Below are positions 3,001 to 37,500 of a DNA stretch of 64,000 bases, piece by piece. Both the position numbers and the translations under genes were made by a program. The number at the start of each line of letters is the position of its first letter. The first letter of the stretch is position 1. Origin of the DNA: Ylistrum balloti (Eukaryota); assembly GCF_031769215.1 (NCBI RefSeq), contig NW_026782366.1:992001-1056000 (forward strand), given 5' to 3'. The notes beneath the pieces were generated by a model. That model saw only the letters and a program-made list of their open reading frames with translations. It was not told where the DNA came from and did not search any database.

Positions 3001-4426
3001 TCTAACTGAAAAATGAGAGACTAAATGCTTATTTCTGAAGCAAAATGGAAGAATTTTTCACTGATGTAACAGACCAGACTATAGATATTTTCATAGATTT
3101 TATTTTCAATTTATCTTCAGCAATTCCATCTCCAAAACATAGCAACCTTAAGAGTACATATCGAATACCAGGATAAAATCAATTTAAAAAGTTGACTAAA
3201 ATTTTGAGGCAAGAGCGTAAGGTGACTTAACCTTACAATAACATTCTTGCGGATAAGCCAGTGAAATGTTACTATACTATTTTGAGTTTCAGTCAGACAA
3301 CTTGTAAAGTCACATTAAGTTAAACTTTAGACACAACTGAATTACATATGTATATTCCTGATAAATATACATAACTGTGTCGTGTCGGACGTCGACGTAA
3401 GGTGTAAATGTACACAATTTACTAAACCAGTGTTAAAGTGAAGGATACTGAATTCGATAAGGCGGAGTCTAAATATTGGACTTACCTCACGGTACCATCC
3501 GGAAAGTCCCATGCGGTAGGCGTGATCCAGTTCACCTTGGCATGAGTCTGGAAAGGGTCGCCATATACATGTTGGTCAGGTGGGCATTCAAGCTGAGGGG
3601 GAGTGATGTCTTCTGTATTTGTATTAAGAGACAGTGTAGTTATGAGTAACATCAACACAAACAACTTACACATTAAGAAAACGTACTTAGTTTTGGCACA
3701 ATGAAATTCAGTGCATTATCATATTCTGGCAAATAAGCGCAAAGATGATTTTTTGCAATGTTACATTTCAGATAGTTATTTAAAAGCAAAAGGCCACCGG
3801 AGTTAGATTATGTCCTACAGGAATATTCACAATCCATTTTTCACATATCATTCTTAACTTTGTTCCTGCATAACAGGCTTTATTAGTTATTTTCGAGGCT
3901 AATGGTATTTTTTTTTCAAAAAAAAAGCTCTTTCATTAACAAGCAGTAAAATGATTCGAGGATAGGGAAAAAAATGTAAAAAGCCAAACGATCATTAGTT
4001 TTAACAAGCTTGAAGCTGCATATAAACTAAATATGATTTTAATACCTAAACTCGCTTATTTGATTATCTATTGTAATTTATGGAGATATATTTGAGAATG
4101 TTTTTTCATACTCATTGCTGTTGTTAATATTATACAATTTTCCTCCAAATAACTATTTTTCCATAGTCAAGATACAATCTAAGAAATTTGTTATATGTTG
4201 ACGTCACTTTTCAATATCTTATGTATATCATAAAGCACATGTACGTACTGGGCTGTCTGCTTCTCTTGCTACACCGGGTAAACGTACATTTGACACCTCG
4301 GAATACTCGTCTGAAGAAGCGGCCCCACCTCCTTGATCTGGGACGAATTATAGGTAATGGATCTTCTCGACCTGTTTGTATAGAGATTCCTATTAGGATT
4401 GAAAGGGGAATATATACGCATCTCAT
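70..4426 (-). CDS. Gene A (5' part, continues beyond position 1): signal peptide, cationic propeptide, HYR-sushi-sushi-HYR-sushi-sushi; SVEP1/polydom-like extracellular protein
   Basis: Exons 4426-4249, 3612-3486, 2817-2693, 2351-2160, 1850-1668, 1214-960, 731-534, 258-70 join in frame (phases 1,2,1,1,1,1,1). All acceptors are AG; donors are GT except one GC (1667-1666). Start MRCVYIPLSILIGISIQTG is signal-peptide-like. HYR motifs DITPPQLECP..VNW..P.AWD and YARDRSGNMAKCNF. Sushi C..C..W..C patterns. The 1850-1668 exon is missing from the ORF track (EHSCGPLLPSP...LWSAPVPNCV). Confidence 0.9.
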
Positions 4427-6559
4427 AAAAACACACGATGTTTGCGTTGCTTTAAGGAGGAATAGTCGCGTTGAAAAGTGAAAACTTTCTTGATAAAACG
4501 TGATAATTGAAGTATTTAAACGAAATGAGGATCGCGTTAAAACGAAATAATTTTATTAAAACAAAACGAAACGAAACACAATATTAATAATTTGATATAA
4601 ACTTAAGATGATAAATAACTAACGCGTTTAAACGAGATCACTGTTGCGTTTTAACAAGAAAAATAATTTTGTTTTGTGTTTCAAATGGCCTTAAAATGAC
4701 TAAATGGTTATATTTCATTACTTTCCCCATGCGTTTGTTTTCAGGCAAGCGTTGTAATTCTCAAAATTATACTCTTTATAAAATTATAAATTGATACAGA
4801 CTATCAACTTTAAACTAACGCTAGCTTTGATCGGAGATAGCCGCGTTCATCACGTGACCTTATAGAGCCTCGTTTTAACCCGCCGCTTTGATATGATTTC
4901 TTATTATATATAATTATGTATGTGCACATAGACCACGACTGCACTACCCTACAACAATGAAAATAGTGTTCGTGTTTTTGTTCTTCATCATCATTTAGAA
5001 ATCATTTATGTGGGAATACATGTACCAGTAAGATAACAGAAGACACACAACTGAATAGCACATTTAAATAATTTAGAGTAGATACAGTAGAGCCAAACAA
5101 TGACTTAAATTGAATCATATATTTGTTTCGTCCTTCTAAGACTTGTCAGTGATGTTAAGATCCTAAATGTTGAAGCCTTGTGGCGACTGAGGAAAATCAA
5201 GTGACCGAAAGAAAAGTCAAAATCTAGACTGGGAGGTGCAGTCCCATAATGAAGTAAATTTCTTAATTTTCATATATCAAATCATTTTAGAACAGCGTCA
5301 AATGCACATGTATACTCTGAACCGTGCCTCTGTTCGGTTGAGTTGAAACGTGGTAGGTTACTGCAAACCTTTCTTCGCCATTTTTAGACTTTATCGTTTA
5401 TTTTCTGCTTCTTGTAACTGTTTACTTACATATTTCAAGTTCACCTGACCATTCTCCATCTTTACAATATACCCATGTTTGCCGAGAATTCTGTGTACAA
5501 GTAAATATACAAATGTGTCCGGGACTGACAACATCCTCTATAGGGGTAACACGGTTGTTTTCCTCGTCCTGGCATTTTATGTTTGTCGACGGCAAGTCGG
5601 TGGTATCACAACCTCCCTTTACTGTACCCTACAATGGATATACGGGAAATTAGATCACAAATATATACAGTATTTGTAAATGATGCTGAAATTTTCAACT
5701 ACCGAAAGGAAGATGGTATTCAAATGACAAAACAAATGAAACAAAAAGACAAATGGCGAAATAGAAACATCAGCGACATACAATGTACCAACATTGACAG
5801 ATCGGCTGTATCGTACACAAGGAATAGATCCAAATTACAAATAGAATATAGTATATAAGGATTAAATAGAACTGTCAGGAACAGTGTTCTCGTCAACTAA
5901 CATACATGTAGAATTGAATTAGTTTTCGTTAGTTATTCCGAATGGTAACTATTTAGTCCACTTTTAATATGTCAATTTATCTTATTGTAACATACCTGTA
6001 CTGTAAATATCTCCCAAAAGGCTGCTACAATCCACAGATATACGTGAAACCTTGTCATGACGGGTCTTCGAACGGGCGTCTCTGCATAGGTATGAGTGTG
6101 CAGGTGGACATAAAACTAATTGATAAAGAACTTCCGGGTACGTTGTATTTATATCTGCGTATGTACATTTGTTCAAAATAGATTACTTGTATGACTGGAA
6201 ATCACTGTAACTTGTTCATTTGGAAGTGTTTGCCCTGAATTATATGTTTACCTGCTACAAAATTGTATTCGAGGCCTAGTTTAATACAATTATCTTAGAT
6301 ACTTGATGTTCCTAATCACAAAAGTTCTACCAGTGTTTAGATAATTGTATCGTAAAAGTATGAAGTCTGAATAAACTGATGAATAAAATTATGATTATTC
6401 TATCACGAACTCATCTGAAATACAAAACTTTAAATCTGCGATTTTGTCAAATTAAACAATAAAACGTGAATGTTAATGCAAAATGGTATTTAACATGCCT
6501 CTGTACAAACGCTCTTTCTTTTATGGCCAGTTCAATGAAGATGGAATGTCTTAAGCGTT

Positions 6560-13640: not shown

Positions 13641-16600
13641 ATTAGTATCGTGATAGTTCCACTACGCAATAGTACACCATGGGTTTTTACGTTACCAAAC
13701 TACAAGAATGACGTGTTGTGTTTACGACAGATAATTGCCATTACTCAATGTCACAACTGTAGTCATTATATAATCATATTTGGTCTTATTATGCACAATG
13801 CAATTATTTGTCTGGAAAACTTCCAACTCACTAACGAATTGATTGACCTGAGAAGGTTGACCGACTTCTTCCTGTTTCCTTATATAGAAATGATAATAAA
13901 AACAACTCGCAAGGATAATTACTTACTGACTGCAAATAAAAAAAATATCATTTCATTTCAGAATATGTTATTGCACTGATATTGGTACAATTGGAATCGG
14001 ACAGCAGGAATAGTCTACACAAACTATCTCCTTAAAGTAATAACACTGCATACTACGTGGTTGGGAAAGTGACCCCATACCTTGTCGCGTCCATTCGTGG
14101 GAATTGAACCCTGAATTGTATTCAAGGCCTAGTTTAATACAATTATCTTAGATACTTGATGTTCCTAATCACAAAAGTTCTACCAGTGTTTAGATAATTG
14201 TATCGTAAAAGTATGAAGTCTGAATAAAATGTTCGCATTCTGGTAATCCCACAACTTCTAGATTCTACATGGTAACCCATAGTTAAAATAGGACTTTATT
14301 TTGATGGCCGTTCGAAATCACGTGGACATCATTCTAACGTGTTACATAAAATTGATACAAGTCATTATCACTATGGCTTATTGTAAGATATATAGTATTG
14401 CCTACTTAAGCCACTCCTTATTCTATTAATAACCTTTGAATATCTTAATACGCTGAATTCCAACGACGGTAATTACATCCTCGTTCTGATTAATATATCT
14501 GCAATCTATGTTATGAACTTTTTAAGAAGTCGATTGTTTACCAAAATATTTATTCAATGGTGCCATGGATTCTGAGGACTATAACCTACGTCAGCTAAAT
14601 CACGCGACTTACTTCCCGGTTCGAAGATACTGTAAACAAAAACTAAATCTAATTAGATTTGAAAAAACTCCGGTCGTAAAATAGTATTGTTTTCTGATAA
14701 ATGTGTTAGCATCGTGAAAAATATATATCAAGGTCTAAGCTGTGATAGTTTACTCGGAAACAAGAAATAAAAATTAGATAAAACTTTCGTAGAAGTGGTA
14801 TACCTTTCATAAACCTGCTAAAATATCGTAGTTGATTTAACAGCATTTACATGTGGAGATGAAATATGTCATTGAGTTTAACAGTTTATTCTGCAATAAA
14901 CACTTCCCGTAAAACAGACTATGAACTACCACAACTCGTAGGCATAGAGGGATTTAGATAGCCCCTCATGTGAAAAATGCCTAAAGGCGCGTAAATAGTT
15001 AGTATTTTAATTCAAGTGGTCTAGTATTTAAAATACCAAGGACGCTTAAATTCCCAATGCCAAATGTCATAACAGAGTGCTTAAAATGTCAACGACATCT
15101 ACGCGAAAAAGTAGAGAGTAGTGAAAGGCAATACATTGATTTCCATAAGAGTAATATTGTATGGGCGGTTTTAAACAAGGGGAAGTGGTAGCTAAACATT
15201 TTTATCACACCTTGGTCCATCTGACGTTTTTTGATGCTCTCTGGAGAAAAAAAGTAACTAGGTGATGCAAAAATGGTGATCATGGCACAGCATTTTCGTT
15301 ATGGAGAGCAAAATCAGAAAGGGCGTTTCTGCCCAGATTTCTTTTTAAATTCTCCATTTGATTAATGACACTATCGGCAGAATTTATTGAAGAACTCTCG
15401 TATTCTCACAGTTTGCTCATTCTCTGATATATTTCTATTCATACTAGTTCTATGTTGTTATATACGATATGATGGTTGCAATAGATTTACCACCAAATTT
15501 CCAGGTGGGAGTTCCTAGTCGATGGAATGTTATAACAATGACTTCTGAATCACCGAACATATGTGTGATCACTGTCGTACGATAATATCAGCAATGTTTT
15601 GTTAGGTAGTAATACCAATCTTCCCGGGAAATTTTAATCATTATAACTAAGGCTAAACACTTCCTTCTTCTCTTCGTGGAATCCATGTCATGGATGTTTT
15701 GAAGAAAATTATTGTAAAATAATACCTATTTAAAATGGCACCTTGGAATGAATCCAGATTTATTCTCTTGACTTTGCTTTGATTTAAACATATCCATTGG
15801 TATCAAATATACAGGTGGGATTGGGCACAAGATTCTTAAGCCCTTTCCTATAGAGTTTGACAAAATACATATTAACAAGACCAGACAACATGTTTAAATA
15901 CGATTATTATGCGAAGAGAAAGAAAGAGAGAGCGAATATAATTAATTTCTTGTAAATCGGTCTCTCTTTCAATGAACAACACTAGTAAAAATACAAAACA
16001 TGTGTTATATGTCTTAAATAGATCGTAATTGGTACATCTATCTACTCCTAACAATACTAGACTGAAAATTCTCCGTATAGTTTATCAAAATTTTATTGTG
16101 TTGTGAGTTAATCCCGTGATTCTTTAAGTCATATCCCTACAAAACAAAATGTTGTAAAAATTGTATTTAGCACGTCAACAGGTCAACTGATAATATTCCC
16201 GAGATACCAGGAGTCTCTAGATCAAAATCGGTACATCTATCAACTGCTTATAATCCTAGACGGGAATCTAGATACTTTAGTATGTTTGTTATAGCATTAC
16301 GTAAGGAGAATATTGTGTTTATTAACAACTTTCTCAGAAACCAAAACTTAGAGACTAAAACACTTCGATACTGACTTGCTTTTATACAATTTTAACTTCA
16401 GCTTAATTAAATGTTATCAGAGCTGTCATATCATGGTGAAAAATAAACATTTAAATCCTATTTAATTTAATGTATGTTTTCATTTTATTCTACCCCCTCA
16501 GAGTATTCTATTTTTCATTTTGACATTATACATGTACAATATCTTTACTGAATTCAATTACAAAACTTCCTCCTTCGATATGTAGAAATGACATGATATA

Positions 16601-17124: not shown

Positions 17125-18950
17125 TTCTGTCATTACCTACCTTTTGATTTGTGTGTATGTGATGTACTCCGCTATAACCTACCTTTTGATTGGTGTGTCT
17201 CATCACTTATGGTTTACTCCGCCATAACCTACCTTTTGATTGGTGTGTCTCATCACTTATGATGTACTCCACCATAACCTACCTTTTGATTTGTGTGTAT
17301 CATCACTTATGATGTACTCCGTCATTACCTACCTTTTGATTGGTGTGTATCATCACTTATGGTTTACTCCGCCATAACCTACCTTTTGATTTATGTGTAT
17401 CATCACTTATGATGTACTCTGTCATTACCTACCTTTTGATTGGTGTGTATCATCACTTATGGGTTACGCCGCCATAACCTACCTTTTGATTTGTGTGTCT
17501 CATCACTTATGATGTACTCCGCCATAACCTACCTTTTGATTGGTGTGTCTCATCACTTATGGTTTACTCCGCCATAACCTACCTTTTTATTGGTGTGCCT
17601 CATCAGTTATGGTGTACTCCGCCATAACCTACCTTTTGATTTGTGTGTCTCATCACTTATGATGTACTCCGTCATTACCTACCTTTTGATTGGTGTGTCT
17701 CATCACTTATGGTTTACTCCGCCATAACCTACCTTTTGATTTGTGTGTATCATCACTTATGATGTACTCCGTCATTACCTACCTTTTCATTGGTGTGTAT
17801 CATCACTTATGGTTTACTCCGCCATAACCTACCTTTTAATTGGTGTGACTCATCACTCATGATGTACTCCGCCATAACCTACCTTTTGATTGGTGTGTAT
17901 CATCACTTATGGGTTACGCCGCCATAACCTACCTTTTGATTGGTGTGTCTCATCACTTATGATGTACTACGCCATAACCTACCTTTTGATTGGTGTGTCT
18001 CATCACTTATGGTTTACTCCGCCATAACCTACCTTTTTATTGGTGTGCCTCATCAGTTATGGTGTACTCCGCCATAACCTACCTTTTAATTGGTGTGACT
18101 CATCACTCATGATGTACTCCGCCATAACCTACCTTTTGATTGGTGTGTATCATCACTTATGGGTTACGCCGCCATAACCTACCTTTTGATTGGTGTGTCT
18201 CATCACTTATGATGTACTACGCCATAACCTACCTTTTGATTGGTGTGTCTCATCACTTATGGTTAACTCCGCCATAACCTACCTTTTTATTGTTGTGCCT
18301 CATCAGTTATGGTGTACTCCGCCATAACCTACCTTTTGATTTGTGTGTCTCATCACTTATGATGTACTCCGCCATAACCTACCTTTTGATTGGTGTGTCT
18401 CATCACTTATGATGTACTCCGTCATAACCTACCTTTTGATTGGTGTGTCTCATCACTTATGGTTTACTCTGCCATAACCTACCTTTTTATTGGAGTGCCT
18501 CATCAGTTATGATGTACTCCGCCATAACCTACCTTTTGATTAGTGTGTCTCATCACTTATGGTGTACTCCGCCATAACCTACCTTTTGATTTGTGTGTAT
18601 CATTACTTATGATGTACTCCGTCATTACCTACCTTTTAATTGGTGTGACTCATCACTCATGATGTACTCCGCCATAACCTACCTTTTGATTTATGTGTAT
18701 CATCACTTATGATGTACTCCGCCATAACCTACCTTTTCATTGGTGTGTCTCATCACTAATGATGTACTCCGCCATAACCTACTTTTGATTGGTGTGTCTC
18801 ATCACTTATGGTTTACTCCGCCATAACCTACCTTTTGATTTGTGTGTATCATCACGTATGATGTACTCCGCCATAACCTACCTTTTGATTGGTGTGTATC
18901 ATCACTTATGGTTTACTCCGCCATAACCTACCTTTCGATTCCTGTGTCTC
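17125..18950 (+). repeat. 50-bp minisatellite B, about 36 units (copy 2)
   Basis: Same unit as 10945-11810; contains a 250-bp (5-unit) internal duplication. Confidence 0.95.
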
Positions 18951-21494
18951 ATTATTCATAATTATTGCTTTTGATATGCTTTTGAACAACCGCTTTGCAT
19001 TGTCGTGTTTTCAGGTCCAAACGTTGGCATATTTAGACTTAAAACTATTAAACTTTCCACCGTATACAAATACCAGTTTATCTGTATACCAAGTACTGAA
19101 AATGTCACTTAGATTAAGAAATTATCAGAATCGGGCCTACTTCAGATATTTTTCAGGGCTACGATCCGAATACTTTCACATTTTCAGTAAATAAAAATTA
19201 CTATTTATAATGACTTCAAAGTGCCTAAGGTGCATGTTTTGTGTAATCTACCAGTAAACGCTGTCTCTGTTTTCATGTTTACTCTTCAGTTTAACCTTCC
19301 AGCTTAATTCTTTATTTCTTTAATTCAATATTCTCTTTTGAGTCTTCCCTATGTTGTGCATGGATGTCATTTACCAAGTCTTGTAAGTATCGAAGATACA
19401 TGTACTTTTCATGACCAAATAATGAAAAATCTCCCCATTCTTACCCGTGCCTTCATCCTTCATCATTTCCAAACTAAACGCGCAAAATACTGAACAAATA
19501 CCACGTACTTATAACTCCAGTTTCGAATTATCAATTGTAAACTTTATACAAATTACAATGCAAGCTAAAATGCAAATTGTATGCAAGATGTACAGCTAAT
19601 ATTATCTTCTGACCTTATCAAACGTAATGGTACATGAGAAGCTGGGAACTATTGTGTTTATGTACTTAAGATCTCTCATTATCATATTTTATCAATAAGC
19701 CCAATGACGATTTTGTGCACCCACACTAATTGTTATAGAAATCACGATGACTATAAAGATATATAATTTTTTAGAGCAATATTGTCGTAGTGGAAATGGC
19801 GAACACTAGATAATCGCAGATATGGTTAAATTTTCAATTTGCACATTTAAAACGCTGTTTGAAAACAAAACTAGCCAGATCAGATTTTATAATTTATTTC
19901 AAATAATTGTATTAGATTCGGCTTTTTTTATATTGGTAGTGCACGAGTATCATATGTAGTGAGAACGCCGCACGCAGGTCTACTATTTCTTACTGTTGAT
20001 ATTTGTTTACGGCCTTGACAGATATGTCGACAATACCGATCTATAATTTACACTAAACCAGCTGAAATACGTCATAATGGTATTCCTATTCTAGTTCCAG
20101 TTAAATCCCTTCAAAACTTCCTGCTTTTAACAATGGTATGGTTCACTGAATTGCACCTGTCCTAAACATACGTAAAACAACACGCATACAGTACTAAATA
20201 CCTTTGGGTATCTGGATATTCTTTACTGGTGTCAGTTATGTAAAATCGAAATCGACCGACACAAGGGAGCCTGAAGCTGGTTCCCAATTCCTAGTTCCGA
20301 ACTAAGAGCCAGATCCAAGTTCCATTTAAGGAAAACTTGTATGCTGAAAAAACGAAAGGTCCAACACGCATGATATAATTCTAATTCGGTACAGGAATCG
20401 AACCCACAATCCTTCAGATAAAAATTAAGACTATCATAGCTGTTGAAACGGAATATGTCTTATATGGAACTTATGTTCAAAATCCAGTCCTGTATAAGAC
20501 CTATCCCACTGTTTATAGGGAGTGTGGTACGCATCGTATAGAGAGCAGTGTTAACATGGAGTACGGTACAAAACGTATTGACATCAGTGTTAACAATAGT
20601 ATCGTATTACATATTGTAGTGGTGATTAAGATACACAACGATAGTGTCCATACCAGTAATTTTTACTCCTGAGCGGAGGTTTATTTGTAAGGACATGTCA
20701 TAGTTCCACTACACAATAGTACACCATGGGTTTTTACGTTACCAAGCTACAAGAATGACGTGTTGTGTTTACAACAGGTAAAGCTATTACTCAATGCCTC
20801 AACCGTAGTCATCATATGATCATATTTGGTATTAATTATGTACTATGCAAATATTTGGTCTGGAAAACTTCCAACTCACTAACGAATTGATTGACCTGAG
20901 AAGGTTGTCCGACTTCTTCCTGTTTCCTTATATAGAAATGATAAAAACAACTCGCAAGGATAATTACTGATTGCAAATAAAAAAAATTATTATTTCATTT
21001 CAGAATATGCTATTGCACTGATATTGGTACAATTGGAATCGGACAGCAGGAATAGTCTACACAAACTATCTCCTTAAAGTAATAACACTGCATACTACGT
21101 GGTGGGGAAAGTGACCCCATACCTTGTCACGTCCATTCGTGAAATTGAACCCTGAATTGCATTCAAGGCCTAGTTTAATACAATTATCTTAGATACTTGA
21201 TGTTCCTAATCACAAAAGTTCTACCAGTGTTTAGATAATTGTATCGTAAAAGTATGAAGTCTGAATAAACTGATGAATAAAATTATGATTATTCTATCAT
21301 GAACTAATCTGAAATACAAAAATTCAAATCTGCGATTTTGTCAAATTAAACAATAAAACGTGAATGTTAAGAATAAATACTGCAAAATGGTATTTTACAT
21401 GCCTCTGTACACACACTCTTTCTTTTATGGTCAGTTCAATGAAGATGGAATGTCGTAAGCGTTTATCTATATTCAGATCAATAATGATGATCTT

Positions 21495-21820: not shown

Positions 21821-23691
21821 CATTACGCGCTCAGTAACTGTTGTTATATTACTAAATTTCCAAAACTCAAAATCAAAGTTAAAGAATACAAATATTTATG
21901 AAGCAATTTAAGCACTTTTTACAATTCAACGTTTTATTGCATTTGAATTTTTTTAAAGAACCAAAATGAATTATATTTTGTTGTCAGCAATTTCGATTCA
22001 TTTGAAAAATTCCCAGTTGATACATGTGTTATTTAATGTTTCTGAGAGCCTTTTGTACATTGTGTTCATTTAAAACTAGCCAAAGTTCGTGTTTAACCAC
22101 GATAGTTTAACTATGTATATATATGTAAATGTTCGCTGTCTGGTAATCCCACAACTTCTAGATTCTACATGGTAACCCATAGTTAAAATAGGACTTTATT
22201 TTGATGGCCGTTCGAAATCACGTGGACATCATTCTAACGTGTTACATAAAATTGATACAAGTCATTATCACTATGGCTTATTGTAAGATATATAGTATTG
22301 CCTACTTAAGCCACTCCTTATTCTATTGATAACCTTTGAATATCTTAATACGCTGAATTCCAACGACGGTAATTACATCCTCGTTCTGATTAATATATCT
22401 ACAATCTATGTTATGAACTTTTTAAGAAGTCGATTGTTTACCAAATGTTTATTCTATGGTGCCATGGATTTGAGGAAAATAACCTACGGCAGCTAAATCA
22501 CGCGACTTACTTCCCGGTTCGAAGATACTGTAAACAAAAACTAAATCTAATTAGATTTGAAAAAACTCCGGTCGTAAAATAGTATTGTTTTCTGATAAAT
22601 GTGTTAGCATCGTGAAAAATATATATCAAGGTCTAAGCTGTGATAGTTTACTCGGAAACAAGAAATAAAAATTAGATAAAACTTTCGTAGAAGTGGTATA
22701 CCTTTCATAAACCTGCTAAAATATCGTAGTTGATTTAACAGCATTTACATGTGGAGATGAAATATGTCATTGAGTTTAATAGTTTATTCTGCAATAAACA
22801 CTTCCCGTAAAACAGACTATGAACTACCACAACTCGTAGGCATAGAGGGATTTAGATAGCCCCTCATATGAAAAATGCCTAAAGGCGCGTAAATAGTTAG
22901 TATTTTAATTCAAGTGGTCTAGTATTTAAAATACCAAGGACGCTTAAATTCCCAATGCCAAATGTCATAACAGAGTGCTTAAAATGTCAACGACATCTAC
23001 GCGAAAAAGTGGAGAGTAGTGAAAGGCAATACATTGATTTCCATAAGAGTAATATTGTATGGGCGGTTTTAAACAAGGGGAAGTGGTAGCTAAACATTTT
23101 TATCACACCTTGGTCCATCTGACGTTTTTTGATGCTCTCTGGAGAAAAAAAGTAACTAGGTGATGCAAAAATGGTGATCATGGCACAGCATTTTCGTTAT
23201 GGAGAGCAAAATCAGAAAGGGCGTTTCTGCCCAGATTTCTTTTTAAATTCTCCATTTGATTAATGACACTATCGGCAGAATTTATTGAAGAACTCTCGTA
23301 TTCTCACAGTTTGCTCATTCTCTGATATATTTCTATTCATACTAGTTCTATGTTGTTATATACGATATGATGGTTGCAATAGATTTACCACCAAATTTCC
23401 AGGTGGGAGTTCCTAGTCGATGGAATGTTATAACAATGACTTCTGAATCACCGAACATATGTGTGATCACTGTCGTACGATAATATCAGCAATGTTTTGT
23501 TAGGTAGTAATACCAATCTTCCCGGGAAATTTTAATCATTATAACTAAGGCTAAACACTTCCTTCTTCTCTTCGTGGAATCCATGTCATGGATGTTTTGA
23601 AGAAAATTATTGTAAAATAATACCTATTTAAAATGGCACCTTGGAATGAATCCAGATTTATTCTCTTGACTTTGCTTTGATCTAAACATAT

Positions 23692-24475
23692 CTCCGCCAT
23701 AACCTACCTTTTGATTTGTGTGTATCATCACTTATGATGTACTCCGCCATAACCTACCTTTTGATTGGTGTGTCTCATCACTTATGGTTAACTCCGCCAT
23801 AACCTACCTTTTTATTGGTGTGCCTCATCACTTATGGTGTACTCCGCCATAACCTACCTTTTGATTTGTGTGTCTCATCACTTATGGGTTACGCCGCCAT
23901 AACCTACCTTTTCATTGGTGTGTCTCATCACTTATGATGAACTCCGCCATAACCTACCTTTTTATTGGAGTGCCTCATCAGTTATGGTGTACTCCGCCAT
24001 AACCTACCTTTTGATTTGTGTGTCTCATCACTTATGATGTACTCCGCCATAACCTACCTTTTGATTGGTGTGTCTCATCACTTATGATGTACTCCGTCAT
24101 AACCTACCTTTTGATTGGTGTGTCTCATCACTTATGCTTTACTCTGCCATAACCTACCTTTTTATTGGAGTGCCTCATCAGTTATGGTGTACTCCGCCAT
24201 AACCTACCTTTTGATTGGTGTGTCTCATCACTTATGATGTACTCCGCCATAACCTACCTTTTGATTGGTGTGTATCATCACTTATGATGTACTCCGTCAT
24301 TACCTACCTTTTGATTGGTGTGTATCATCACTTATGGTTTACTCCGCCATAACCTACCTTTTGATTGGTGTGTCTCATCACTTATGATGTACTCCGCCAT
24401 AACCTACCTTTTGATTGGTGTGTATCATCACTTATGGTTTACTCCGCCATAACCTACCTTTCGATTTGTGTTTCT
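23692..24475 (+). repeat. 50-bp minisatellite B, about 15 units (copy 3)
   Basis: Same unit; the array is joined directly to upstream sequence by a copy-3 deletion at ~23690. Confidence 0.95.
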
Positions 24476-26601
24476 CATTATTCATAATTATTGCCTGTAT
24501 TATGCTTTTGAACAACCGCTTTGTAAAGTCGTGTTTTCAGGTCCAAACGTTGGCATATTTAGACTTAAAACTATTAAACTTTCCACCGTATACAAATACC
24601 AGTTTATCTTTATACCAAGTACTGAAAATGTCACTTAGATTAAGAAATTATCAGAATCGGGCCTACTTCAGATATTTTCCAGGACTTCGATCCGAATACT
24701 TTCCCATTTTCAGTAAATAAAAATTACTATTGATAATGACTTTAAAGTGCCTAATTTGCATGTTTTGTGTAATCTACCAGTAAACGCTGTCTCTGTTTCC
24801 ATGTTTACTCTTCAGTTTAACCTTCCAGGTTAATTCTTCTCTTGTCATCTGTATATGACAATATTCTCTTTTGAGTGTTCCCTATGTTGTGCATGGATGT
24901 CAAGTCTTACCAAGTCTTGTAAGTATCGAAGATACATTTACTGTTCATGACCAAATAATGAAAAATCTCCCCATTCTTACCCGTGCCTTCATCTAGGTGG
25001 AATCAGTATCTTTTCCAAACTAAACGCGCAAAATACTGAACAGATACCACGTACTTATAACTCCAGTTTCGAATTATCAATTGTAAACTTACAAATTACA
25101 ATGCAAGCTAAAATGCAAATTGTATGCAAGATGTACAGCTAATATTATCTTCTGACCTTATCAAACGTAATGGTACATGAGAAGCTGGGAACTATTGTGT
25201 TTATGTACTTAAGATCACTCATTATCACATTTTATCAATAAGCCCAATGACGATTTTGTGCATCCACACTAATTGTTATAGAAATCACGATGACTATAAA
25301 GATATATAAATATTTTAGAGCAATATTGTCGTAGTGGAAATGGCGAACACTAGAAAATCGCAGATATGTATAAATTTTCAATCTGCACATTTAAAACGCT
25401 GTTTGAAAACAAAACTAGCCAGATCAGATTTTATAATTTATTTCAAATAATTGTATTAGATTCGGCTGTTTTGTATTGGTAGTGCACGAATATCATATGT
25501 AGTGAGAACGACGCACGCAGGTCTACTATTTCTTACTGTTGATATTTGTTTACGGCCTTGACAGATATGTCGACAATACCGATCTATAATTTACACTAAA
25601 CCAGCTGAAATAGGCTACGTCATAATGGTATTCCTATTCTAGTTCCAGTTAAATCCCTTCAAAACTTCCTGCTTTTAACAATGGTATGGTTCACTGAATT
25701 GTACCTGTCCTAAACATATGTAAAACAAAAAGTCTCAGCACTAAGTGCGGTTGGGTATCTGGATTTTCTTTACTGGTGTCAGTTGCGAAAATCGACCGAC
25801 ACAAGGGAGCCTGAAGTTGGTTCCCAATTCCGAGCTCCGGAAATGGGAGCCAGATCCAAGTTCCATTTAAGGAAAAAAATTCTGTTGACAAAACGAAAGA
25901 TCCAACACGCATGATATAATTCTAATTCGGTACAGGAATCGAACCTATAATCTTTCAGATAAATATTAAGACTTTCATAGCTTTTGAAACGAAATATGTC
26001 CCATATTGAACTTATGTTGAAAATCCAGTCCTATATAAGACCTATCCCACTGTTTATAGGGAGTACACATCGTATTACGTGATCACGGTATAAGCGGCGG
26101 AACAAATATTATCATTTAGTTTAATGTTACTGTCTGTTCGATTCAATTTGGGACGAAATCACAAGCACAGTGTCGATCATTAAAATGAAAAAGGAAGGGT
26201 TGCGCCCAGCTGTCTTTCTATATATATTTTTATTCTGATAAAAATCGAAATGTCAACACATAATGACACAAAGTAAATGAGGATAACAAAAGTGATTTAA
26301 AACAGGAAATGTAACGATCACTTTCTCCCCAGACACCAATCAATCATTCAAACTATTACATACACGTATTATGTTATAGTATTTACCATTACGCCTTAAC
26401 TTATGGCGTAAACAAAACACACGGGGTACAGAACAAGTCAACTTTGGATTAGCGTTGATTGTGATAGAAACGGATGCTGTGATTGTTATATATATATTTC
26501 TTGAACTCTTGTTAGATTTTTTTTACTGGAAGTTACAAAAACATCGCTCGTGTTTTTTATGTTCGGTCTGTTTTTTCCCTGGGTTTGTTTTACATGTAAC
26601 T

Positions 26602-29600
26602 TTAACAAGCTATATTAACATTGTTAGTATTGCACAAATCCCTGTGGTCGTCACAAATTTTACTGAATGCGGACGATTTGAGTTTGGCGATGAATTCAGT
26701 CTTTGCAGATAATATGAAAGTGGAGTCGGTACAGTTGATTGCACTACTTGTATTCGTACTTGTAAGAGAATATGCTGAAATATAGAAGACGTGATGTAAT
26801 CAGTTGGAAATATCATTTGAGAATGAATAAAAGGCATAATATATTGTGGTATTGTACACTTGTTCATGACAAACAAGACAACACTTTTTTACAAAAGCTG
26901 CGATGTCAATATCGCGCATAAGTCTAATGTGTTAATTGTCTGATTAACTTACATTTTATACATACCAAATATTTTGTAAATTACTTCTATAGAGATAATA
27001 CATATACGATATTATATAATGAATTGATGTACATCTATGAATTTTTATTGCTTTACTTTTTTTTTTTTTTTACATAAATCTGCACACATAGTATTCAACT
27101 TACATCTGCAGGTGAGCGGTTCCTGGGTGATAGGGGCCCAGTCTCCGGATGCCCCGCAGACATACCATTGGTCAGGGTCAACAGAGACGGGAAGAAAGTA
27201 ACCAGTGTGACAAACAACTTGGCAGTACCGACCGAAGTCTGTCTTCCAGTCGTTACACACTACAGCACCGTTCTCGGGCACCAGCAGGTCCTCACACGGC
27301 GTAGCTGAATAGAGGACAGTAGACTATGACTACGACTCTATTTAGGCTGCACATGGCATAGTCACAAAGGAGTCAGAAAATATTCAAATCATCTTGTCCA
27401 ATAGATATCTGAAGTATTGTTTACAACATACATGTACAAACATTTCTCTCATAGCGTGCGTTGTACTCTGATTAATTCTTAAAATCATATTTGACATGTT
27501 TTGTGTTTTAAAACCAAGCACAATACTTACGTTTCACATCAACATTTATAATACATTCTGCAGTCTGTCCGTTAGAGGGTTTCACTGTTGCATATTGTAT
27601 CACAAAATCACCCCAGTGAAATTCGCTTTCCGGTTTGGGATAATTTGTGAAAACTTGTACCTCGTTCCCAAAAGGATCGAAGATTGTTGGTGCCGTCCAG
27701 TTGACGAAATGTAGTGGGGACGTGGCATTGGCACTAATGTTGAAATCACAGCCTGTGATCACAGGGGGCTGTATATCTGGAGTGATATATTCATTTAGAT
27801 TTGATTATAATTATCGAGATACTATTAACTATACTGCTCTAATTGGACGTACCTTCATGAAAACGGAGACGTGCTAACCTTTTATTTGAAAAGACTTTAC
27901 CTTTGTCCAGTTTGATGAGCTTGTTTATAACGTGTCTCCTTTCAATCACTTTTACATATCAAATATACCATGGTATTTCAATTAGAAATATACGTTATCG
28001 ATCAATTAAAAAAATTTGTGCTTGTGCATTGCATTGAACACGTTCCGATTCGAAATAAACAGTCACTCAGTTACCATTTGTTTGTACATCTGTAATCTAT
28101 ACAACAATGTCTATTTACAAACCTTCTGCACATGTTAAACCACTCCAACCAGGCAGACAGGAACAGGTAAACATCTCTACATTATTAGTACACGTGCCAC
28201 CATTAGCGCACGGGTTACTGGAGCAAGTGTTCGAAACTGATGAATAAACACAAGAGCACATTGTTATTAAATTTGTAAAACACTGGATGGAATTAAGTTA
28301 ATAACCAAGAAAAGTACATATAATTCAAAATGTTAGATGTTTATTTCTAAATATAGTATATACTTATATTTCTCTACGTACATGCGCATCTTGGGTTAGT
28401 CCCACTCCACGTTCCGGACAGCTGACATGTCCTCGTCTGTCCACCATCCACCAGCGTGTAATGAGTGTTACAAGAATATCCTACACTTGCCCCATACGTG
28501 TACACACTTCCGGTCACCTGACCATTATCTGGAGGTCCCGGGTGACCACAGTTTATTTCTTGTAAGAGAGAAAACAAATAGCATTTACGGTATGACATAC
28601 TGACTTTAAAAGTTAAATTGAAGAATGAAGTGATGACATAACAACTTTGTTTAATGTTTAGTTTTTCTTATGTTTGTCGGCTTGAATCGAAGCACGTGCA
28701 AATGATAAAAAAAAGTGTACACACTTTATGTACACGAAAATATCAGTTCATTACAACATATACTATTTTTACGACAAAATGAATTTCATAAAAATCTCCC
28801 ATCGCACCAAATACCCATCGCACCAAATAAAATGCTACACCTCTCATCGAAAGCGTCCGAGCACAAGATGTGATAGTAAGATATAGTCATTAAAAATATC
28901 CATTTAAATGTCCCTTTCGTATCAACAAAAATGTAATAAAGAAGAAAAATTGTCTGTATTAGATTCCCAGTTATCATCAACATCAGCTTCGGATTAATAT
29001 TGCAATGTACCAGTTCAAAGCTTGTTTGTACATCGCGTGTAGACGATGGTGTATAACAGTTTCATCAGGAGACATTGCAATAAAGTGCACCACTCACTTT
29101 AGATATAAAAGTATGTAAACAAGTAATAGCGACTGGTGGTGAACAGTTATAAAACTGCGATTAGACATAATGTGTCCTACTTGCAGCTATCAAAATGTTT
29201 CAAGAAAACTGGACAAAAATTACACTAGGTGTCGAAGGGCTGTCAAATACTATTCAAATAAAATCAAGCCAAACTCTGAACATAAACAAGATTGTACTAA
29301 AGAAGCACAACTGCATAGCACCTTAACACAATTGAATAGCACATTCAATACAGCTTAAGAGTAAGATACAGCCAAGCAATGAACTCAGCTGCATCATACA
29401 GCTATTTCGGCCGTGTAGGACTCGTCAGTGATGCTACATCATACTGCTGTCTCGTCCTTCTAGGACTCGTCAGTGATGCTACATCATACTGCTGTCTCGC
29501 CCTTCCAGGACTCGTCAGTGATGCTACATCCTACTACTGTCTCGCCCTTCCAGGACTCGTCAGTGATGCTACATCATACTGCTGTCTCGTCCTTCTAGGA

Positions 29601-30729
29601 CTCGTCAGTGATGCTACATCATACAGCTGTCTCGCCCTTCCAGGACTCGTCAGTGATGCTACATCATACTACTGTCTCGCCCTTCCAGGACTCGTCAGTG
29701 ATGCTACATCATACTGCTGTCTCGTCCTTCTAGGACTCGTCAGTGATGCTACATCATACTGCTGTCTCGCCCTTCCAGGACTCGTCAGTGATGCTACATC
29801 ATACTACTGTCTCGCCCTTCCAGGACTCGTCAGTGATGCTACATCATACTGCTGTCTCGTCCTTCCAGGACTCGTCAGTGATGCTACATCATACTGCTGT
29901 CTCGCCCTTCCAGGACTCGTCAGTGATGCTACATCATACTACTGTCTCGCCCTTCCAGGACTCGTCAGTGATGCTACATCATACTGCTGTCTCGTCCTTC
30001 TAGGACTCGTCAGTGATGCTATTGGCCTAAATTTTGAAACCTAGAAGGCGGTTGAGGAAATTCAATGTGATCGAAAGAAAAGTCAGTTACCAGATGGGGA
30101 GGTGAACTAGCCTTATAATTTAAGAAATTTTGTAATTTTAAGCACGCTTTTACATAAACATACACAGGTGTAATTGCTAGCGTGACATGGTATTATCTGA
30201 ATACTGCATTTAAAGATCACACCTCAGATATTATCTTAAATTGGCATACCATAAATTGAAAACTCCTACTTACGGTAATTGCAGCAATTTCCATAATAAC
30301 CAGCAACGCATGTGCAGCCACTTCCGAAACTACTGCCACCGTTGTGGCATACCTCGTTACATCCGGAGTAACTATAAGCAAGATCACTTGTCGCACAGTC
30401 ACTGAATTCGTCACATCCTTCGTAAAAGAAGATATTCACCAGTCTCTCACGTTGTCTCTGACCGAAGCAAGCGCTAGTACAGTCAGACCATGGTTGCCAA
30501 GCAACCCAAGAACAGTTGCAGTGGTTCCAGGTTGCAGCACGTCCTCCTGATACAGAGCGGTATGACAGCTGCCATTGTGTCAGCAGAACCAGAGATCCGC
30601 CGATGAACAACGCTATCTGAATTAATAAGTGACTTATCGGATACAGATTTAACAGAGACAACAAGTCACACCACCAATTTATTACGGGTTAGCTTGATAA
30701 GTATGTACCCAGAAGAGAGAAAATCCCAT
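26602..30729 (-). CDS. Gene B: complete 386-aa secreted protein, signal peptide-TSP1-EGF-sushi-HYR-sushi-partial SEA-like Cys domain
   Basis: Exons 30729-30709, 30616-30274, 28558-28382, 27776-27531, 27304-27104, 26774-26602 total 1161 nt, all GT-AG and in frame. The spliced start is MGFSLFW|[27 protein letters not shown]1 [14 protein letters not shown]...RQRER; EGF CHNGG...[12 protein letters not shown]; ends ...[12 protein letters not shown]-stop. The last exon uses a frame not shown in the ORF track. No transmembrane segment. Confidence 0.88.
29417..30020 (+). repeat. 45-bp minisatellite (about 13 units) in gene B intron 2, organised as a 135-bp three-unit higher-order repeat
   Basis: Unit ggactcgtcagtgatgctacatcatactgctgtctcgcccttcca; variants cycle every third unit. 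Confidence 0.97.
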
Positions 30730-34500: not shown

Positions 34501-37500
34501 ACATGGCTTAAAAAGTGGATCAGAGTTTAGCGAGGGATATCACTCATTTGGATATACTGCTAGGGACAGACATGGTAATGCTGATACTTGTTCCACACAG
34601 TTTGAAATTAAAGGTATGTAAATATTACCACAATCTATTTAAGAAAATTATATACAACCATAAAACAACTTTTCTGTTGTGTTAAGTCTAATATGCAACT
34701 GCGTAAAAATGTTTACTTGATATATCATTATATGTAGATTTTATTTCAAAGGTAAAACGTGAATGATATCTTAATAAAACATGTACGTATCTCTGAAGAA
34801 AGAAAGAGCCAACATACTAACGAAATCTTAATTGAAACCCATAATCAATGACATATGATCAAGAGAAAGAGTTCTGCCACGGAAACTCCAGGAAAAATAC
34901 AAAGATAACACGGAGTATTCCAACCAGGTAAAATACAATGATAACACTAGGAATTCTAAACGTTTAAAATACAAGGATAACACTAGGAATACTAAACGGG
35001 TAGAATACAAGGATAACACTAGGAATTCTAAACGTTTAAAATACAAGGATAACACCAGGAATTCTAAACGGGTAAAATACAAGGATAACACTAGGAATTC
35101 TAAACGGGTAGAATACAAGGATAACACTAGGAATACTAAACGGGTAGAATACAAGGATAACACTAGGAATTCTAAACGTTTAAAATACAAGGATAACACT
35201 AGGAATTCTAAACGGGTAAAATACAAGGATAACACTAGGAATACTAAACGGGTAGAATACAAGGATAACACTAGGAATTCTAAACGTTTAAAATACAAGG
35301 ATAACACTAGGAATACTAAACGGGTAGAATACAAGGATAACACTAGCAATTCTAAACGTTTAAAATACAAGGATAACACCAGGAATTCTAAACGGGTAGA
35401 ATACAATTATAACACTAGGAATTCTAAACGTTTAAAATACAAGGATAACACTAGGAATTCTAAACGGGTAAAATACAAGGATAACACTAGGAATTCTAAA
35501 CGTTTAAAATACAAGGATAACACTAGGAATTTTAAACGTTTGACATACAAGGATAACACGAGGAATACTAAACGGGTAGAATACAAGGATAACACTAGGA
35601 ATTCTAAACGTTTAAAATACAAGGATAACACCAGGAATGCTAAACGGGTAGAATACAAGGATAACACTAGGAATTCTAAACGTTTAAAATACAAGGATAA
35701 CACTAGGAATTCTAAACGGGTAGAATACAAGGATAACACTAGGAATTCTAAACGGGTAGAATACAAGGATAACACTAGGAATTCTAAACGGGTCAAATAC
35801 AAGGATAACACTAGGAATTCTAAACGGGTAGAATACAAGGATAACACTAGGAATTCTAAACGTTTAAAATACAAGGATAACACTAGGAATTCTAAACGGG
35901 CAAACGTCTTCTGCTATATCTAAAATCATTCAGCGTATAATTTCGTTTAAACAGGAAACGCTGAGTTCTTAAAAGATGCCGATGTAAACAACAACGACAA
36001 CAACCCATGTGTACTAACCAACACACGTTTACTATTCATCAAATATATATGTACACCTACTGGAAACCCTAGTCTGTCTGAATTGTTCCTATTTAAGACC
36101 TCATCTAAGAATTATTCTTAAAGTGGTTATTTGCAAATCAGGATAGTCATATATTATGTTTTGATTTTTTGTGATACAGTGAGGCGTTGTATCAGTATGC
36201 CACCTATACCAGAAAACGGGAAAATGTCTTGTGAACCCAGCTGGTACGATCCATTGCTTGGCAGTACCTGTACATGTAACTGTAATGCAGGATACTCATT
36301 GTCAGGAAGCTCCACAAGAACGTGCCAGAATACCGAAACCTTTGACGGAACACCGGCAGTTTGCTCCAGTAGGTTTGCTGTACAATGTATATACTGCAAT
36401 AGCCTTCCGGTATATTCTCAAGATTGTTGTCACATCTTCTAAGTTTTGTAAATAATGTCCACATGCTGTGTCTGTCAGATACGTTTTTAGCTTGTAATTT
36501 TGTTTCAACTTCTTATATATAATCAATTTGGTACAATCATTAAGTGAAACTATTTTATATCAAACATTGTTTTTTATTTATCTGATTTTTACCTATTACT
36601 CCTTATATTGTATTTTTATGGAGATGTTCAGAACGTCATTTTCTTGTCCTGTTTTGAAGAAATCCAATGTCCTGACGTTCCCGACCCTGAAAACGGACAA
36701 GCGGTCTGTTTGTTTGGTAATCTCTACCAAAGTGTTTGCATGACGTCATGCCCGGTCAATCAGGGTTACGGCACCGTAGCCGTATTCATATATTGTCGTG
36801 ACGACGGAACTTGGTCGGGTAGTCTGGAGCCATGTTATGGTAAGGAACCGTGGTATCATATTAATATTATAGATTGAGATCTGATGGTTCTGTTTGTATG
36901 TTTCTTTACAATGTTTAACAAAATCAATGACTAAGGGCGTAATATATAATTCATTTCTTTATGTGCTACAATACAATACTTTCTCGTCTTAAATGAAGGT
37001 GAATTTTACAGTTCGCCAATAATGCACATTTTCTGGAAATATATAGAAGATGAGGTTGATTCATAGAAAGTCTCAATTTTGTGGGTTCAATTTTTCCTGA
37101 AGCCATCAAATTCCCTCATGGCAATAACGCAAGTGCAAAACATGTACATAATGAAACCTCATGGAGGTGTCATCTTTCTCGATGATGAAATGCGAAGCTA
37201 TATTTTTTATCTATTTTTTAATAATCTTTAATCAAGTCCGCGCCCTAATGCATAAAACAAAACAAAAATCTCGTTTTCTGAAGTTGAACAATTTTAGATC
37301 AGAATAAAAATTAGATTAGAATAAAAATAGCATATTAGCAAGAACACGCGTTATCATGAGCATTCTTTACAAAACTTACACAACGATGTAGTAGTGTATG
37401 CATATATCAAGATCGGTTGAAGGGAGATCACTCGTATTCTAGGTGCATTGAGGTTACCAGAAATTAGAATGAAATAATATTTATCTACAGACATGTTACG

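What the first reader, a model, noticed from the sequence alone, without database searches (positions are those of the whole stretch)
4256..4345. Cryptic antimicrobial-like peptide at the N-terminus of gene A
Seen: after the signal peptide comes RPRSRR|WGRFFRRVFRGVKCTFTRCS|KRSR. That is a furin motif (RSRR), a 20-aa peptide with six basic residues, no acidic ones, helical spacing of W/F/V against R and one Cys pair, then a dibasic KR, all within exon 1. Known: cationic amphipathic helices starting (G)WG.FF are typical of pleurocidin/piscidin-class peptides. Inference: a large adhesion-type protein may release a membrane-active peptide on maturation.
Basis: partly seen in the sequence, partly recalled or inferred. 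Interest (0 to 1): 0.7.

Follow-up and report, generated by a model that had tools for sequence, protein, structure and literature searches.

The report
Conserved furin-site peptide in scallop adhesion protein
The arginine-rich peptide is real, conserved coding sequence, but it is the third exon of a large scallop membrane protein and not its start; it follows a cleavage motif kept in every scallop and mussel relative found, which makes protease processing likely and release of a free antimicrobial peptide unproven.

Summary
The peptide RPRSRR-WGRFFRRVFRGVKCTFTRCS-KRSR is encoded at 4256-4345, on the minus strand. It is real coding sequence: the Mizuhopecten orthologue has RPRR-WGRFFRRVFRAIKCVFARCS at the same place, with 16 of 20 core residues and all six basic residues identical.

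The "signal peptide" MRCVYIPLSILIGISIQTG is intron. The peptide lies in exon 3 (4371-4249). Before it come a signal-peptide exon (6058-5996) and a Cys-rich Sushi-like exon (5628-5430). After it comes the first HYR exon (3612-3486). The NCBI model for this gene (Ylistrum balloti, XP_060077180.1) omits all three 5' exons.

All 12 family sequences from scallops and mussels share one module:
- an R-x-K/R-R convertase motif;
- then an aromatic, mostly amphipathic segment;
- then an invariant Cys pair;
- then an Arg just before the HYR domain.

My best reading is that a convertase cleaves after RSRR. That would expose a Trp/Phe-rich amphipathic helix as the new N-terminus of the membrane-anchored protein. 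Release of a free antimicrobial peptide is possible but weakly supported. No RNA run was listed, and nothing here was tested biochemically.

The parts
5996..6058 (-). Exon 1 coding part: MTRFHVYLWIVAAFWEIFTVQ, the real signal peptide. Donor CAG|GTATGT, phase 0.
   Evidence: It is the only ATG-started hydrophobic ORF with a good phase-0 donor in the 21 kb upstream of exon 2. It resembles the orthologue's signal peptide, which ends ..QILTVQ.
5430..5628 (-). Exon 2: N-terminal Cys-rich, Sushi-like domain (GTVKGGCDTT...GELEI). Acceptor ttgtag|GG. It ends with T|GTAAGT, so the last Cys codon is split (phase 1).
   Evidence: tblastn of P0151 residues 25-91 gives E 3.6e-24. Pfam Sushi is not significant: no hit for the window exon and E 0.46 for P0151. 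The AF2 beta-domain has pLDDT 87-92.
5369..5381 (-). The 'MAKK' start used by NCBI model XP_060077180.1. It lies 48 nt inside intron 2, has a weak donor (aaag|GTTTGC) and gives no signal peptide. It is probably a mis-annotation.
4372..4426 (-). This is the 3' end of intron 2, read through in frame.
   Evidence: The orthologue has no counterpart; its sequence goes from the domain's last Cys straight to LENPSS. The acceptor acag|GT at 4373-4372 restores the Cys codon T+GT.
4249..4371 (-). Exon 3, the peptide exon: 123 nt, phase 1 to phase 1. It encodes (C)REDPLPIIRPRSRRWGRFFRRVFRGVKCTFTRCSKRSRQP(K).
   Evidence: - tblastn with P0151 gives 66% identity, E 5.8e-14.
- GC is 46% against 28-31% in the flanks, like the other exons.
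- Joining exon 2 directly to exon 4 would give T+AA, a stop, so exon 3 is obligatory.
4328..4339 (-). RSRR, the proprotein-convertase (furin-type) motif R-x-K/R-R. Predicted cleavage is between R (4330-4328) and W (4327-4325).
   Evidence: The motif is present at the aligned place in 12 of 12 family sequences. The linker is modelled as disordered, pLDDT below 50.
4268..4327 (-). Core peptide WGRFFRRVFRGVKCTFTRCS: an amphipathic cationic helix followed by a C-x4-C ring.
   Evidence: - Hydrophobic moment 0.76, shuffle p about 0.002.
- 16 of 20 residues are identical in Mizuhopecten, including all six basic residues.
- The Cys pair is invariant in the family.
- AF2 predicts a helix at low confidence.
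4256..4267 (-). Only the last Arg is a family feature.
   Evidence: The orthologue has KGPR. The paralogues have R-x-R, RPPR or similar, mostly not a canonical furin motif.
3486..3612 (-). Exon 4: first half of the first HYR domain ((K)DITPPQLECPP...DGTV). Acceptor atacag|AA, phase 1.
   Evidence: Identical to residues 5-46 of P0009. Pfam HYR E 0.017 for this half-domain, and 5.7e-15 for the full HYR exon at 952-1233.

Best explanation
Shown:
- The stretch is exon 3 of a Ylistrum balloti gene for a large type I membrane protein. The order of parts is signal peptide, Cys-rich Sushi-like domain, linker, this peptide, then HYR, Sushi, EGF, TSP1 and ephrin-receptor-like domains and a transmembrane anchor.
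- The same module sits at this place in every scallop and mussel relative whose N-terminus is on record. The module is R-x-K/R-R, then an aromatic and mostly amphipathic segment that usually starts G-W/F-F, then an invariant Cys pair (C-x4-C or C-x6/7-C), then an Arg before the HYR domain.

Inferred:
- A furin-type proprotein convertase cuts after RSRR in the secretory pathway.
- The cut separates the small N-terminal domain. It makes the Trp/Phe-rich helix WGRFFRRVFRGVK, closed by the CTFTRC disulphide ring, the new free N-terminus of the membrane-anchored ectodomain.
- That exposed amphipathic end then acts as a lipid-binding or membrane-binding element. In this gene and its Mizuhopecten orthologue it is strongly cationic (+6) and resembles an antimicrobial peptide. 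Whether it is cut off by a second protease is open.
For: Gene structure:
- tblastn of orthologue P0151 maps its N-terminal domain to 5628-5430 (E 3.6e-24), its peptide segment to 4366-4244 (E 5.8e-14) and its HYR domain to exon 4.
- The phases fit: T+GT gives Cys and A+AA gives Lys.
- There is a unique signal-peptide exon candidate at 6058-5996.
- The GC profile of 4249-4371 is exon-like.
- Skipping exon 3 creates a stop codon.

Conservation:
- R-x-K/R-R is present in 12 of 12 sequences, both Cys are invariant and the Arg before HYR is nearly invariant.
- The core is 16/20 identical between Ylistrum and Mizuhopecten. The neighbouring N-terminal domain is 48% identical.
- 9 of 12 family peptides have a helical hydrophobic moment that at most 3.5% of shuffles reach.

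Expression in relatives:
- P0154 and P0157 sit on intron-free 5-7 kb contigs (ENA ERZ27229292 and Logan SRR26159595). These are therefore most likely transcripts that include the module.

Structure:
- In two AF2 models the flanking domains are confident, the linker holding the motif has pLDDT below 50, and a helix starts at the residue after the predicted cut.

Topology:
- Family members end in a transmembrane segment and a cytoplasmic tail.
Against: - There is no RNA or peptide evidence from this species; no sequencing run was listed.
- The NCBI model of this gene lacks exons 1-3. If that model rests on real transcripts, an isoform without the peptide exists.
- Cleavage is inferred from a motif only.
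- The donor of exon 3 (CCA|GTACGT) and its acceptor tract are weak by a generic consensus (score 0.94).
- The helix has low AF2 confidence (pLDDT about 45-64).
- Charge is not conserved (-1 to +6), so 'membrane-active' is not one uniform property across the family.
- The Cys pair could instead bond to the N-terminal domain.
Confidence: 0.6

Rival explanations
1. Two cuts, after RSRR and at or after KR/KRSR, release a free peptide of about 20-24 residues with a disulphide ring. The peptide acts as a soluble cationic antimicrobial peptide in mucus or haemolymph.
For: - Charge +6, no acidic residue, and a hydrophobic moment of 0.76 that 0.2% of shuffles reach.
- All six basic residues are kept in Mizuhopecten.
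- Two mussel relatives are also strongly cationic: GWFRRAVSRVGKFVGKFVC and GWFRFRFRFRTRSFVGRIVC.
- An Arg just before the HYR domain is nearly invariant, and in a few members it forms R/K-x-x-R.
Against: - The KR pair is absent from the orthologue (KGPR) and from all paralogues.
- The residues before the conserved Arg mostly do not form a canonical furin site.
- Half of the family peptides are nearly uncharged and very hydrophobic, which is unlike soluble antimicrobial peptides.
- There is no sequence match to any solved antimicrobial peptide.
- The precursor is a membrane protein of about 1400 residues, an uneconomical way to make one peptide per molecule.
Confidence: 0.15
2. There is no cleavage. 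The basic and aromatic helix with its disulphide ring is a structural linker, or a glycosaminoglycan-binding or lipid-binding patch, between the N-terminal domain and the first HYR domain. The R-x-K/R-R motif is kept for binding and not for processing.
For: - Basic clusters next to aromatic residues are common in heparin-binding and lipid-binding sites (general knowledge).
- The module is always flanked by folded domains.
- No experiment shows cleavage.
Against: - A strict R-x-K/R-R in 12 of 12 sequences, while the rest of the linker and the peptide's own charge vary freely, is the signature of a protease site and not of a generic basic patch.
- The motif lies in a linker modelled as disordered in a secretory-pathway protein.
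Confidence: 0.2
3. The ORF is a chance open frame, or it is the true first exon with its own signal peptide.
For: - By my rough estimate, about two open frames of 113 codons are expected by chance in a 64-kb window of this composition.
- The opposite strand is open here as well.
- ATG 4426 is followed by a hydrophobic stretch.
Against: - There is orthologue-level conservation of exactly the part from 4366 downstream, and none of the part upstream.
- The exon 2 to exon 3 junction restores a conserved Cys.
- The 71-residue ORF has no relatives as such.
Confidence: 0.03

Closest known systems
Substrates of furin-type proprotein convertases that are cut between extracellular domains (for example Notch S1, integrin alpha chains, the insulin receptor; general knowledge)
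   Same: An R-x-K/R-R motif in an exposed linker of a type I membrane protein in the secretory pathway, conserved across species.
   Different: Here the residue after the cut starts a short aromatic amphipathic helix with a disulphide ring. No cleavage has been shown.
   Same: About 20 residues, +6 charge, Trp/Phe against Arg on a helical wheel, and a small C-terminal Cys ring as in brevinin or ranatuerin-type peptides (own knowledge).
   Different: - Those come from small dedicated prepropeptides; this one is an internal exon of a membrane protein of about 1400 residues.
- No sequence similarity was detected.
- Cationic charge is not conserved in the family.
- The releasing site on the C-terminal side is not conserved.
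Class I viral fusion glycoproteins and syncytins (a furin site followed directly by a fusion peptide on the membrane-anchored subunit)
   Same: The layout is the same: an N-terminal subunit, R-x-K/R-R, then a hydrophobic Gly/Phe-rich N-terminal peptide on the transmembrane-anchored fragment. Paralogues read RAKR-GFLGSIGGFFGGII and RTKR-GWFGSLF.
   Different: An Ig-like HYR domain follows the peptide, not heptad-repeat coiled coils. There is no homology. The gene A version is highly charged and not hydrophobic.
SVEP1/polydom-like and hyalin-like HYR-Sushi-EGF proteins
   Same: The domain set is HYR, Sushi, EGF, TSP1 and ephrin-receptor-like. NCBI names the gene 'SVEP1-like'.
   Different: No VWA or pentraxin domain is listed for this protein among the precomputed Pfam hits. 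The family has a transmembrane anchor and the N-terminal convertase-peptide module, which I am not aware of in vertebrate SVEP1.

Membership tests
Pleurocidin/piscidin-class antimicrobial peptides | Small dedicated precursor: signal peptide, mature peptide of about 22-25 residues, short propiece | tested here: not met
   The peptide is exon 3 of a multi-domain type I membrane protein. P0009 has 1317 residues as annotated and the orthologue P0151 has 1575.
Pleurocidin/piscidin-class antimicrobial peptides | Sequence similarity to family members | tested here: not met
   phmmer of the exon product against all PDB chain sequences gave only a ribosomal protein at E 1.4. This test is weak for such short peptides.
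Pleurocidin/piscidin-class antimicrobial peptides | Cationic amphipathic helix | tested here: met
   Charge +6, hydrophobic moment 0.76, shuffle p about 0.002. AF2 predicts a helix at low confidence.
Pleurocidin/piscidin-class antimicrobial peptides | Antimicrobial activity of the mature peptide | not testable with these tools
   Needs synthesis and MIC and haemolysis assays.
Furin-type proprotein convertase substrate | R-x-K/R-R motif, conserved among relatives | tested here: met
   RSRR here, RPRR in the orthologue, and RTKR, RVKR, RAKR, RKKR, RQKR, RIKR or RGKR in the others: 12 of 12.
Furin-type proprotein convertase substrate | Site located in the lumenal or extracellular part of a secretory-pathway protein, in an accessible segment | tested here: met
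   There is a signal-peptide exon at 6058-5996, a transmembrane anchor at the C-terminus, and a linker with pLDDT below 50 in two models.
Furin-type proprotein convertase substrate | Demonstrated cleavage | not testable with these tools
   Needs protein chemistry.
HYR/Sushi (SVEP1-like) extracellular protein family | HYR and Sushi domains detected by profile | tested here: met
   Pfam HYR E 5.7e-15 (952-1233) and Sushi E 1e-7 (2110-2376). The precomputed domains of P0009 agree.
Class I fusion protein | Heptad-repeat coiled coil following the fusion peptide | tested here: not met
   The HYR beta-domain starts about 10 residues after the Cys ring.

The most novel reading that the evidence does not exclude
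Scallops and mussels share a previously undescribed family of type I membrane proteins. These proteins would be 'armed' by furin cleavage: removing a small N-terminal cap domain exposes a tethered, membrane-inserting peptide at the tip of a long HYR/Sushi/EGF stalk. The peptide is fusion-peptide-like in some paralogues and antimicrobial-peptide-like in gene A. A cell surface could then attack or fuse with a bound microbial or cellular membrane. This would be a surface-anchored host-defence or fusogen device, not a secreted peptide.
Probability: 0.12. Interest if true: 0.8.

Novelty: new variant of a known kind. Interest (0 to 1): 0.6.

Why it matters
If the cleavage is real, this is a conserved way of building a membrane-active peptide into a large adhesion-type receptor. 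The module is kept in both scallops and mussels. It is directly testable by expressing the N-terminal fragment, mutating RSRR, and assaying the peptide on vesicles and bacteria.

It would add a class of 'encrypted' or tethered host-defence or fusion-like peptides in bivalves, animals that rely entirely on innate immunity.

In practice it also corrects two NCBI gene models in Ylistrum balloti. One lacks the signal peptide, the N-terminal domain and the peptide exon. The other lacks the peptide exon.

Tried and rejected
- RNA evidence: the look-up of sequencing runs listed no run, so read laying could not be used.
- Word search with the 71-residue ORF found nothing. That search is limited to proteins of 39-124 residues, so it says little.
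- Own-genome searches with the ORF on either strand, and with the DNA, found only the locus itself. It is therefore not a repeat or a transposon fragment.
- I first scored the region as a possible first exon. I found a weak phase-1 donor and an alternative in-frame ATG at 3673 (MCKLFVLM...). Both 'signal peptides' turned out to be translated 3' intron ends, as the genomic-ORF hits P0068 and P0130 also show.
- I considered an acceptor at 4449 (cttaaag|CA) joining exon 2 in frame. I rejected it because it would destroy the conserved last Cys and has no counterpart in the orthologue.
- A word search with the N-terminal module of P0151 found only itself.
- Pfam does not recognise the N-terminal domain as Sushi at a significant level, so I call it Sushi-like only.
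- Foldseek against the PDB gave only generic Ig-like matches.
- A PDB sequence search with the peptide exon gave nothing.
- Four literature searches found no description of the module.
- The exons were never joined into a spliced protein for any search or fold. The orthologue P0151 and single exons by reference were used instead.

Full report
**1. Observation**

The bases 4256-4345 read on the minus strand give RPRSRRWGRFFRRVFRGVKCTFTRCSKRSR. They lie inside a 71-codon ATG-ORF at 4426-4211, and the frame is open for 113 codons from stop to stop.

The 20-residue core has charge +6, no acidic residue and one Cys pair. Its helical hydrophobic moment is 0.76, against a shuffle mean of 0.30; 0.2% of 5000 shuffles reach it.

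An open frame of this length alone is not remarkable. By my estimate about two are expected by chance per 64 kb at 35% GC, and the opposite strand is open here too. The stretch is, however, a GC-rich island, 46% against 28-31% in the flanks, like the confirmed exons nearby. It is single-copy in the 648-Mb genome.

**2. What the gene is**

Downstream on the minus strand lie exons for HYR and Sushi domains. A full HMMER scan with the HYR exon next to the finding returned a 98-100% identical protein of 1317 residues. It is XP_060077180.1, 'SVEP1-like', from the scallop Ylistrum balloti, on a contig of the same length as the window's contig. Its exons map at 100% identity onto window 3612-68.

It has no signal peptide, although the protein ends in a membrane anchor. 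The donor of its first coding exon is poor, aaag|GTTTGC. Its 5' end is therefore suspect.

**3. The orthologue settles the structure**

The Mizuhopecten yessoensis orthologue is P0151, 1575 residues, 78% identical over the shared part. It begins with these parts in order:
- a signal peptide;
- a Cys-rich domain;
- LENPSSIIHHRPRRWGRFFRRVFRAIKCVFARCSKGPRG;
- the HYR domain.

tblastn places its Cys-rich domain at window 5628-5430 (E 3.6e-24). It places its peptide segment at 4366-4244 (66% identity, E 5.8e-14) and its HYR start at exon 4.

The splice logic fits exactly:
- Exon 2 ends ...GAAATAT|GTAAGT, leaving a lone T.
- The acceptor acag| at 4373-4372 is followed by GT, which restores the conserved Cys codon (TGT).
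- Exon 3 is 4371-4249, 123 nt.
- Exon 3 ends CCCA|GTACGT, and A joins AA of exon 4 (3612-) to give Lys.

Joining exon 2 directly to exon 4 would make TAA, so exon 3 cannot be skipped in a productive mRNA.

A signal-peptide exon lies at 6058-5996: MTRFHVYLWIVAAFWEIFTVQ, donor CAG|GTATGT. It is the only candidate of its kind in the 21 kb upstream, and it resembles the orthologue's ...FLCQILTVQ.

The orthologue and single exons by reference stood in for it.

**4. A conserved module**

Nine full-length relatives from scallops (Mizuhopecten, Pecten, Argopecten) and mussels (Mytilus) carry the same arrangement between the N-terminal domain and the first HYR domain. So do a fragment (P0149), the window gene, and a second Ylistrum locus at C108:1310256-1310378.

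The arrangement is:
- R-x-K/R-R, in 12 of 12 sequences;
- a segment that usually begins G-W/F-F;
- two invariant Cys spaced by 4 or 6-7 residues;
- a nearly invariant Arg just before the HYR domain.

Examples are RTKR-GWFGKVVKGFVRGIGCLLTLGLLC, RAKR-GFLGSIGGFFGGIIKGVACAATLGALC and RIKR-GWFRRAVSRVGKFVGKFVCNVFNC.

None of the other roughly 190 HYR proteins retrieved has the pattern. That regex was written from the members themselves, so this check is not independent. The Ylistrum genome holds just these two copies. The second copy's exon is again missing from its NCBI model, P0161.

Two relatives (P0154, P0157) lie on intron-free contigs of 5-7 kb from an ENA assembly and a Logan run. They are thus most likely transcripts that include the module.

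**5. What is and is not conserved in the peptide**

Between Ylistrum and Mizuhopecten the core is 16/20 identical. All six basic residues are kept, and the four changes are conservative ones at small or hydrophobic positions. The adjacent N-terminal domain is only 48% identical.

Across the family, 9 of 12 peptides have a helical moment reached by at most 3.5% of shuffles. Net charge, however, runs from -1 to +6 and mean hydrophobicity from -0.26 to +0.66. The family property is thus an aromatic amphipathic or hydrophobic N-terminal segment plus a Cys ring. Cationic charge is not a family property.

Mizuhopecten has KGPR, and others have GRDR, HRHR, RPPR or SSR, so only the last Arg is kept.

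**6. Structure**

I ran AlphaFold2 on the orthologue fragment 24-225 and on paralogue P0160 19-222, each with the family alignment. Both models give:
- confident beta domains on either side (clearly so in the orthologue model, less so for the N-terminal domain of the paralogue model);
- a linker with pLDDT below 50 around the basic motif;
- a helix of 17-18 residues starting at the residue after the predicted cut, at low confidence.

Foldseek found only generic Ig-like matches. Pfam does not significantly call the N-terminal domain Sushi.

**7. Mechanism**

Shown: the coding status, the exon structure, the conservation of the motif and the Cys pair, and the amphipathic pattern.

Inferred, at about 0.7: a furin-type convertase cuts after RSRR.

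Inferred, at about 0.5 given cleavage: the peptide stays on the membrane-anchored fragment as its new N-terminus. The reason is that no conserved canonical second site exists.

Free release as an antimicrobial peptide is possible, because a conserved Arg precedes the HYR domain and gene A and two mussel members are strongly cationic. I put it at about 0.15. A non-cleaved binding patch gets about 0.2.

**8. Comparison with what is known**

There is no sequence match to solved antimicrobial peptides. The precursor architecture rules out membership of the pleurocidin/piscidin class, so the resemblance is physico-chemical only.

The layout is convertase site, then a hydrophobic Gly/Phe-rich N-terminus on a membrane-anchored subunit. 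This parallels class I fusion proteins, but no coiled coil follows.

Full-text searches found no description of this module.

**9. Verdict**

The gene-structure part of the reading is wrong. The processing idea is strengthened by conservation. The free-antimicrobial-peptide idea remains a minority hypothesis.

Limits: no RNA run was listed for this species. The taxonomic range beyond scallops and mussels is untested. All functional steps are inference.

Noticed in passing
window 5369-5381 (-) and 5996-6058, 5430-5628, 4249-4371 (-): NCBI model XP_060077180.1 (P0009) starts at 'MAKK' inside intron 2. It lacks the signal peptide, the N-terminal Cys-rich domain and the peptide exon that the Mizuhopecten orthologue has. 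It is probably a truncated annotation.
   Followed up: yes
L011:1522-1683 (-) = G000:C108:1310256-1310417: The second Ylistrum locus has an intact peptide exon (..ALIRTKRGWFSSVIKGVVGTIKCISSLFILCGNRPR). Its NCBI model P0161 (LOC132543962) skips this exon, joining ..SLNVENG directly to DRDPPTIICPP.
   Followed up: partly
window 5394-5424 (-): Read through its donor, exon 2 ends ..EICK then TAA, with an AATAAA 20 nt further on (starting at 5402). A short secreted isoform consisting only of the signal peptide and the N-terminal domain is conceivable.
   Followed up: no
window 27048-30688 (-): A separate upstream minus-strand gene has TSP1-like, Sushi, EGF and HYR exons (open frames 30688-30269, 28667-28377, 28297-28118, 27804-27511, 27323-27048). 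It has no convertase-peptide module.
   Followed up: partly
window 36131-47500 (+): A plus-strand gene has Sushi, EGF, ephrin-receptor-like and further exons related to the C-terminal half of P0009. It looks like a neighbouring relative in a cluster.
   Followed up: no
window 29379-30044 (+ frame) and 34828-35923: Two long minisatellite-like tandem arrays give repetitive open frames ([11 protein letters not shown]... and LEFLVLSLYFKR...).
   Followed up: no
window 15070-15298 / 22968-23196, and 18889-19194 / 24415-24720: Near-identical ORF pairs about 5.5-8 kb apart point to a segmental duplication or repeated transposable element between gene A and the upstream gene.
   Followed up: no
window 4801-4900: A GC-rich and CpG-rich patch (44% GC, 8 CpG in 100 nt) lies inside intron 2 and has no detected coding similarity.
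   Followed up: no
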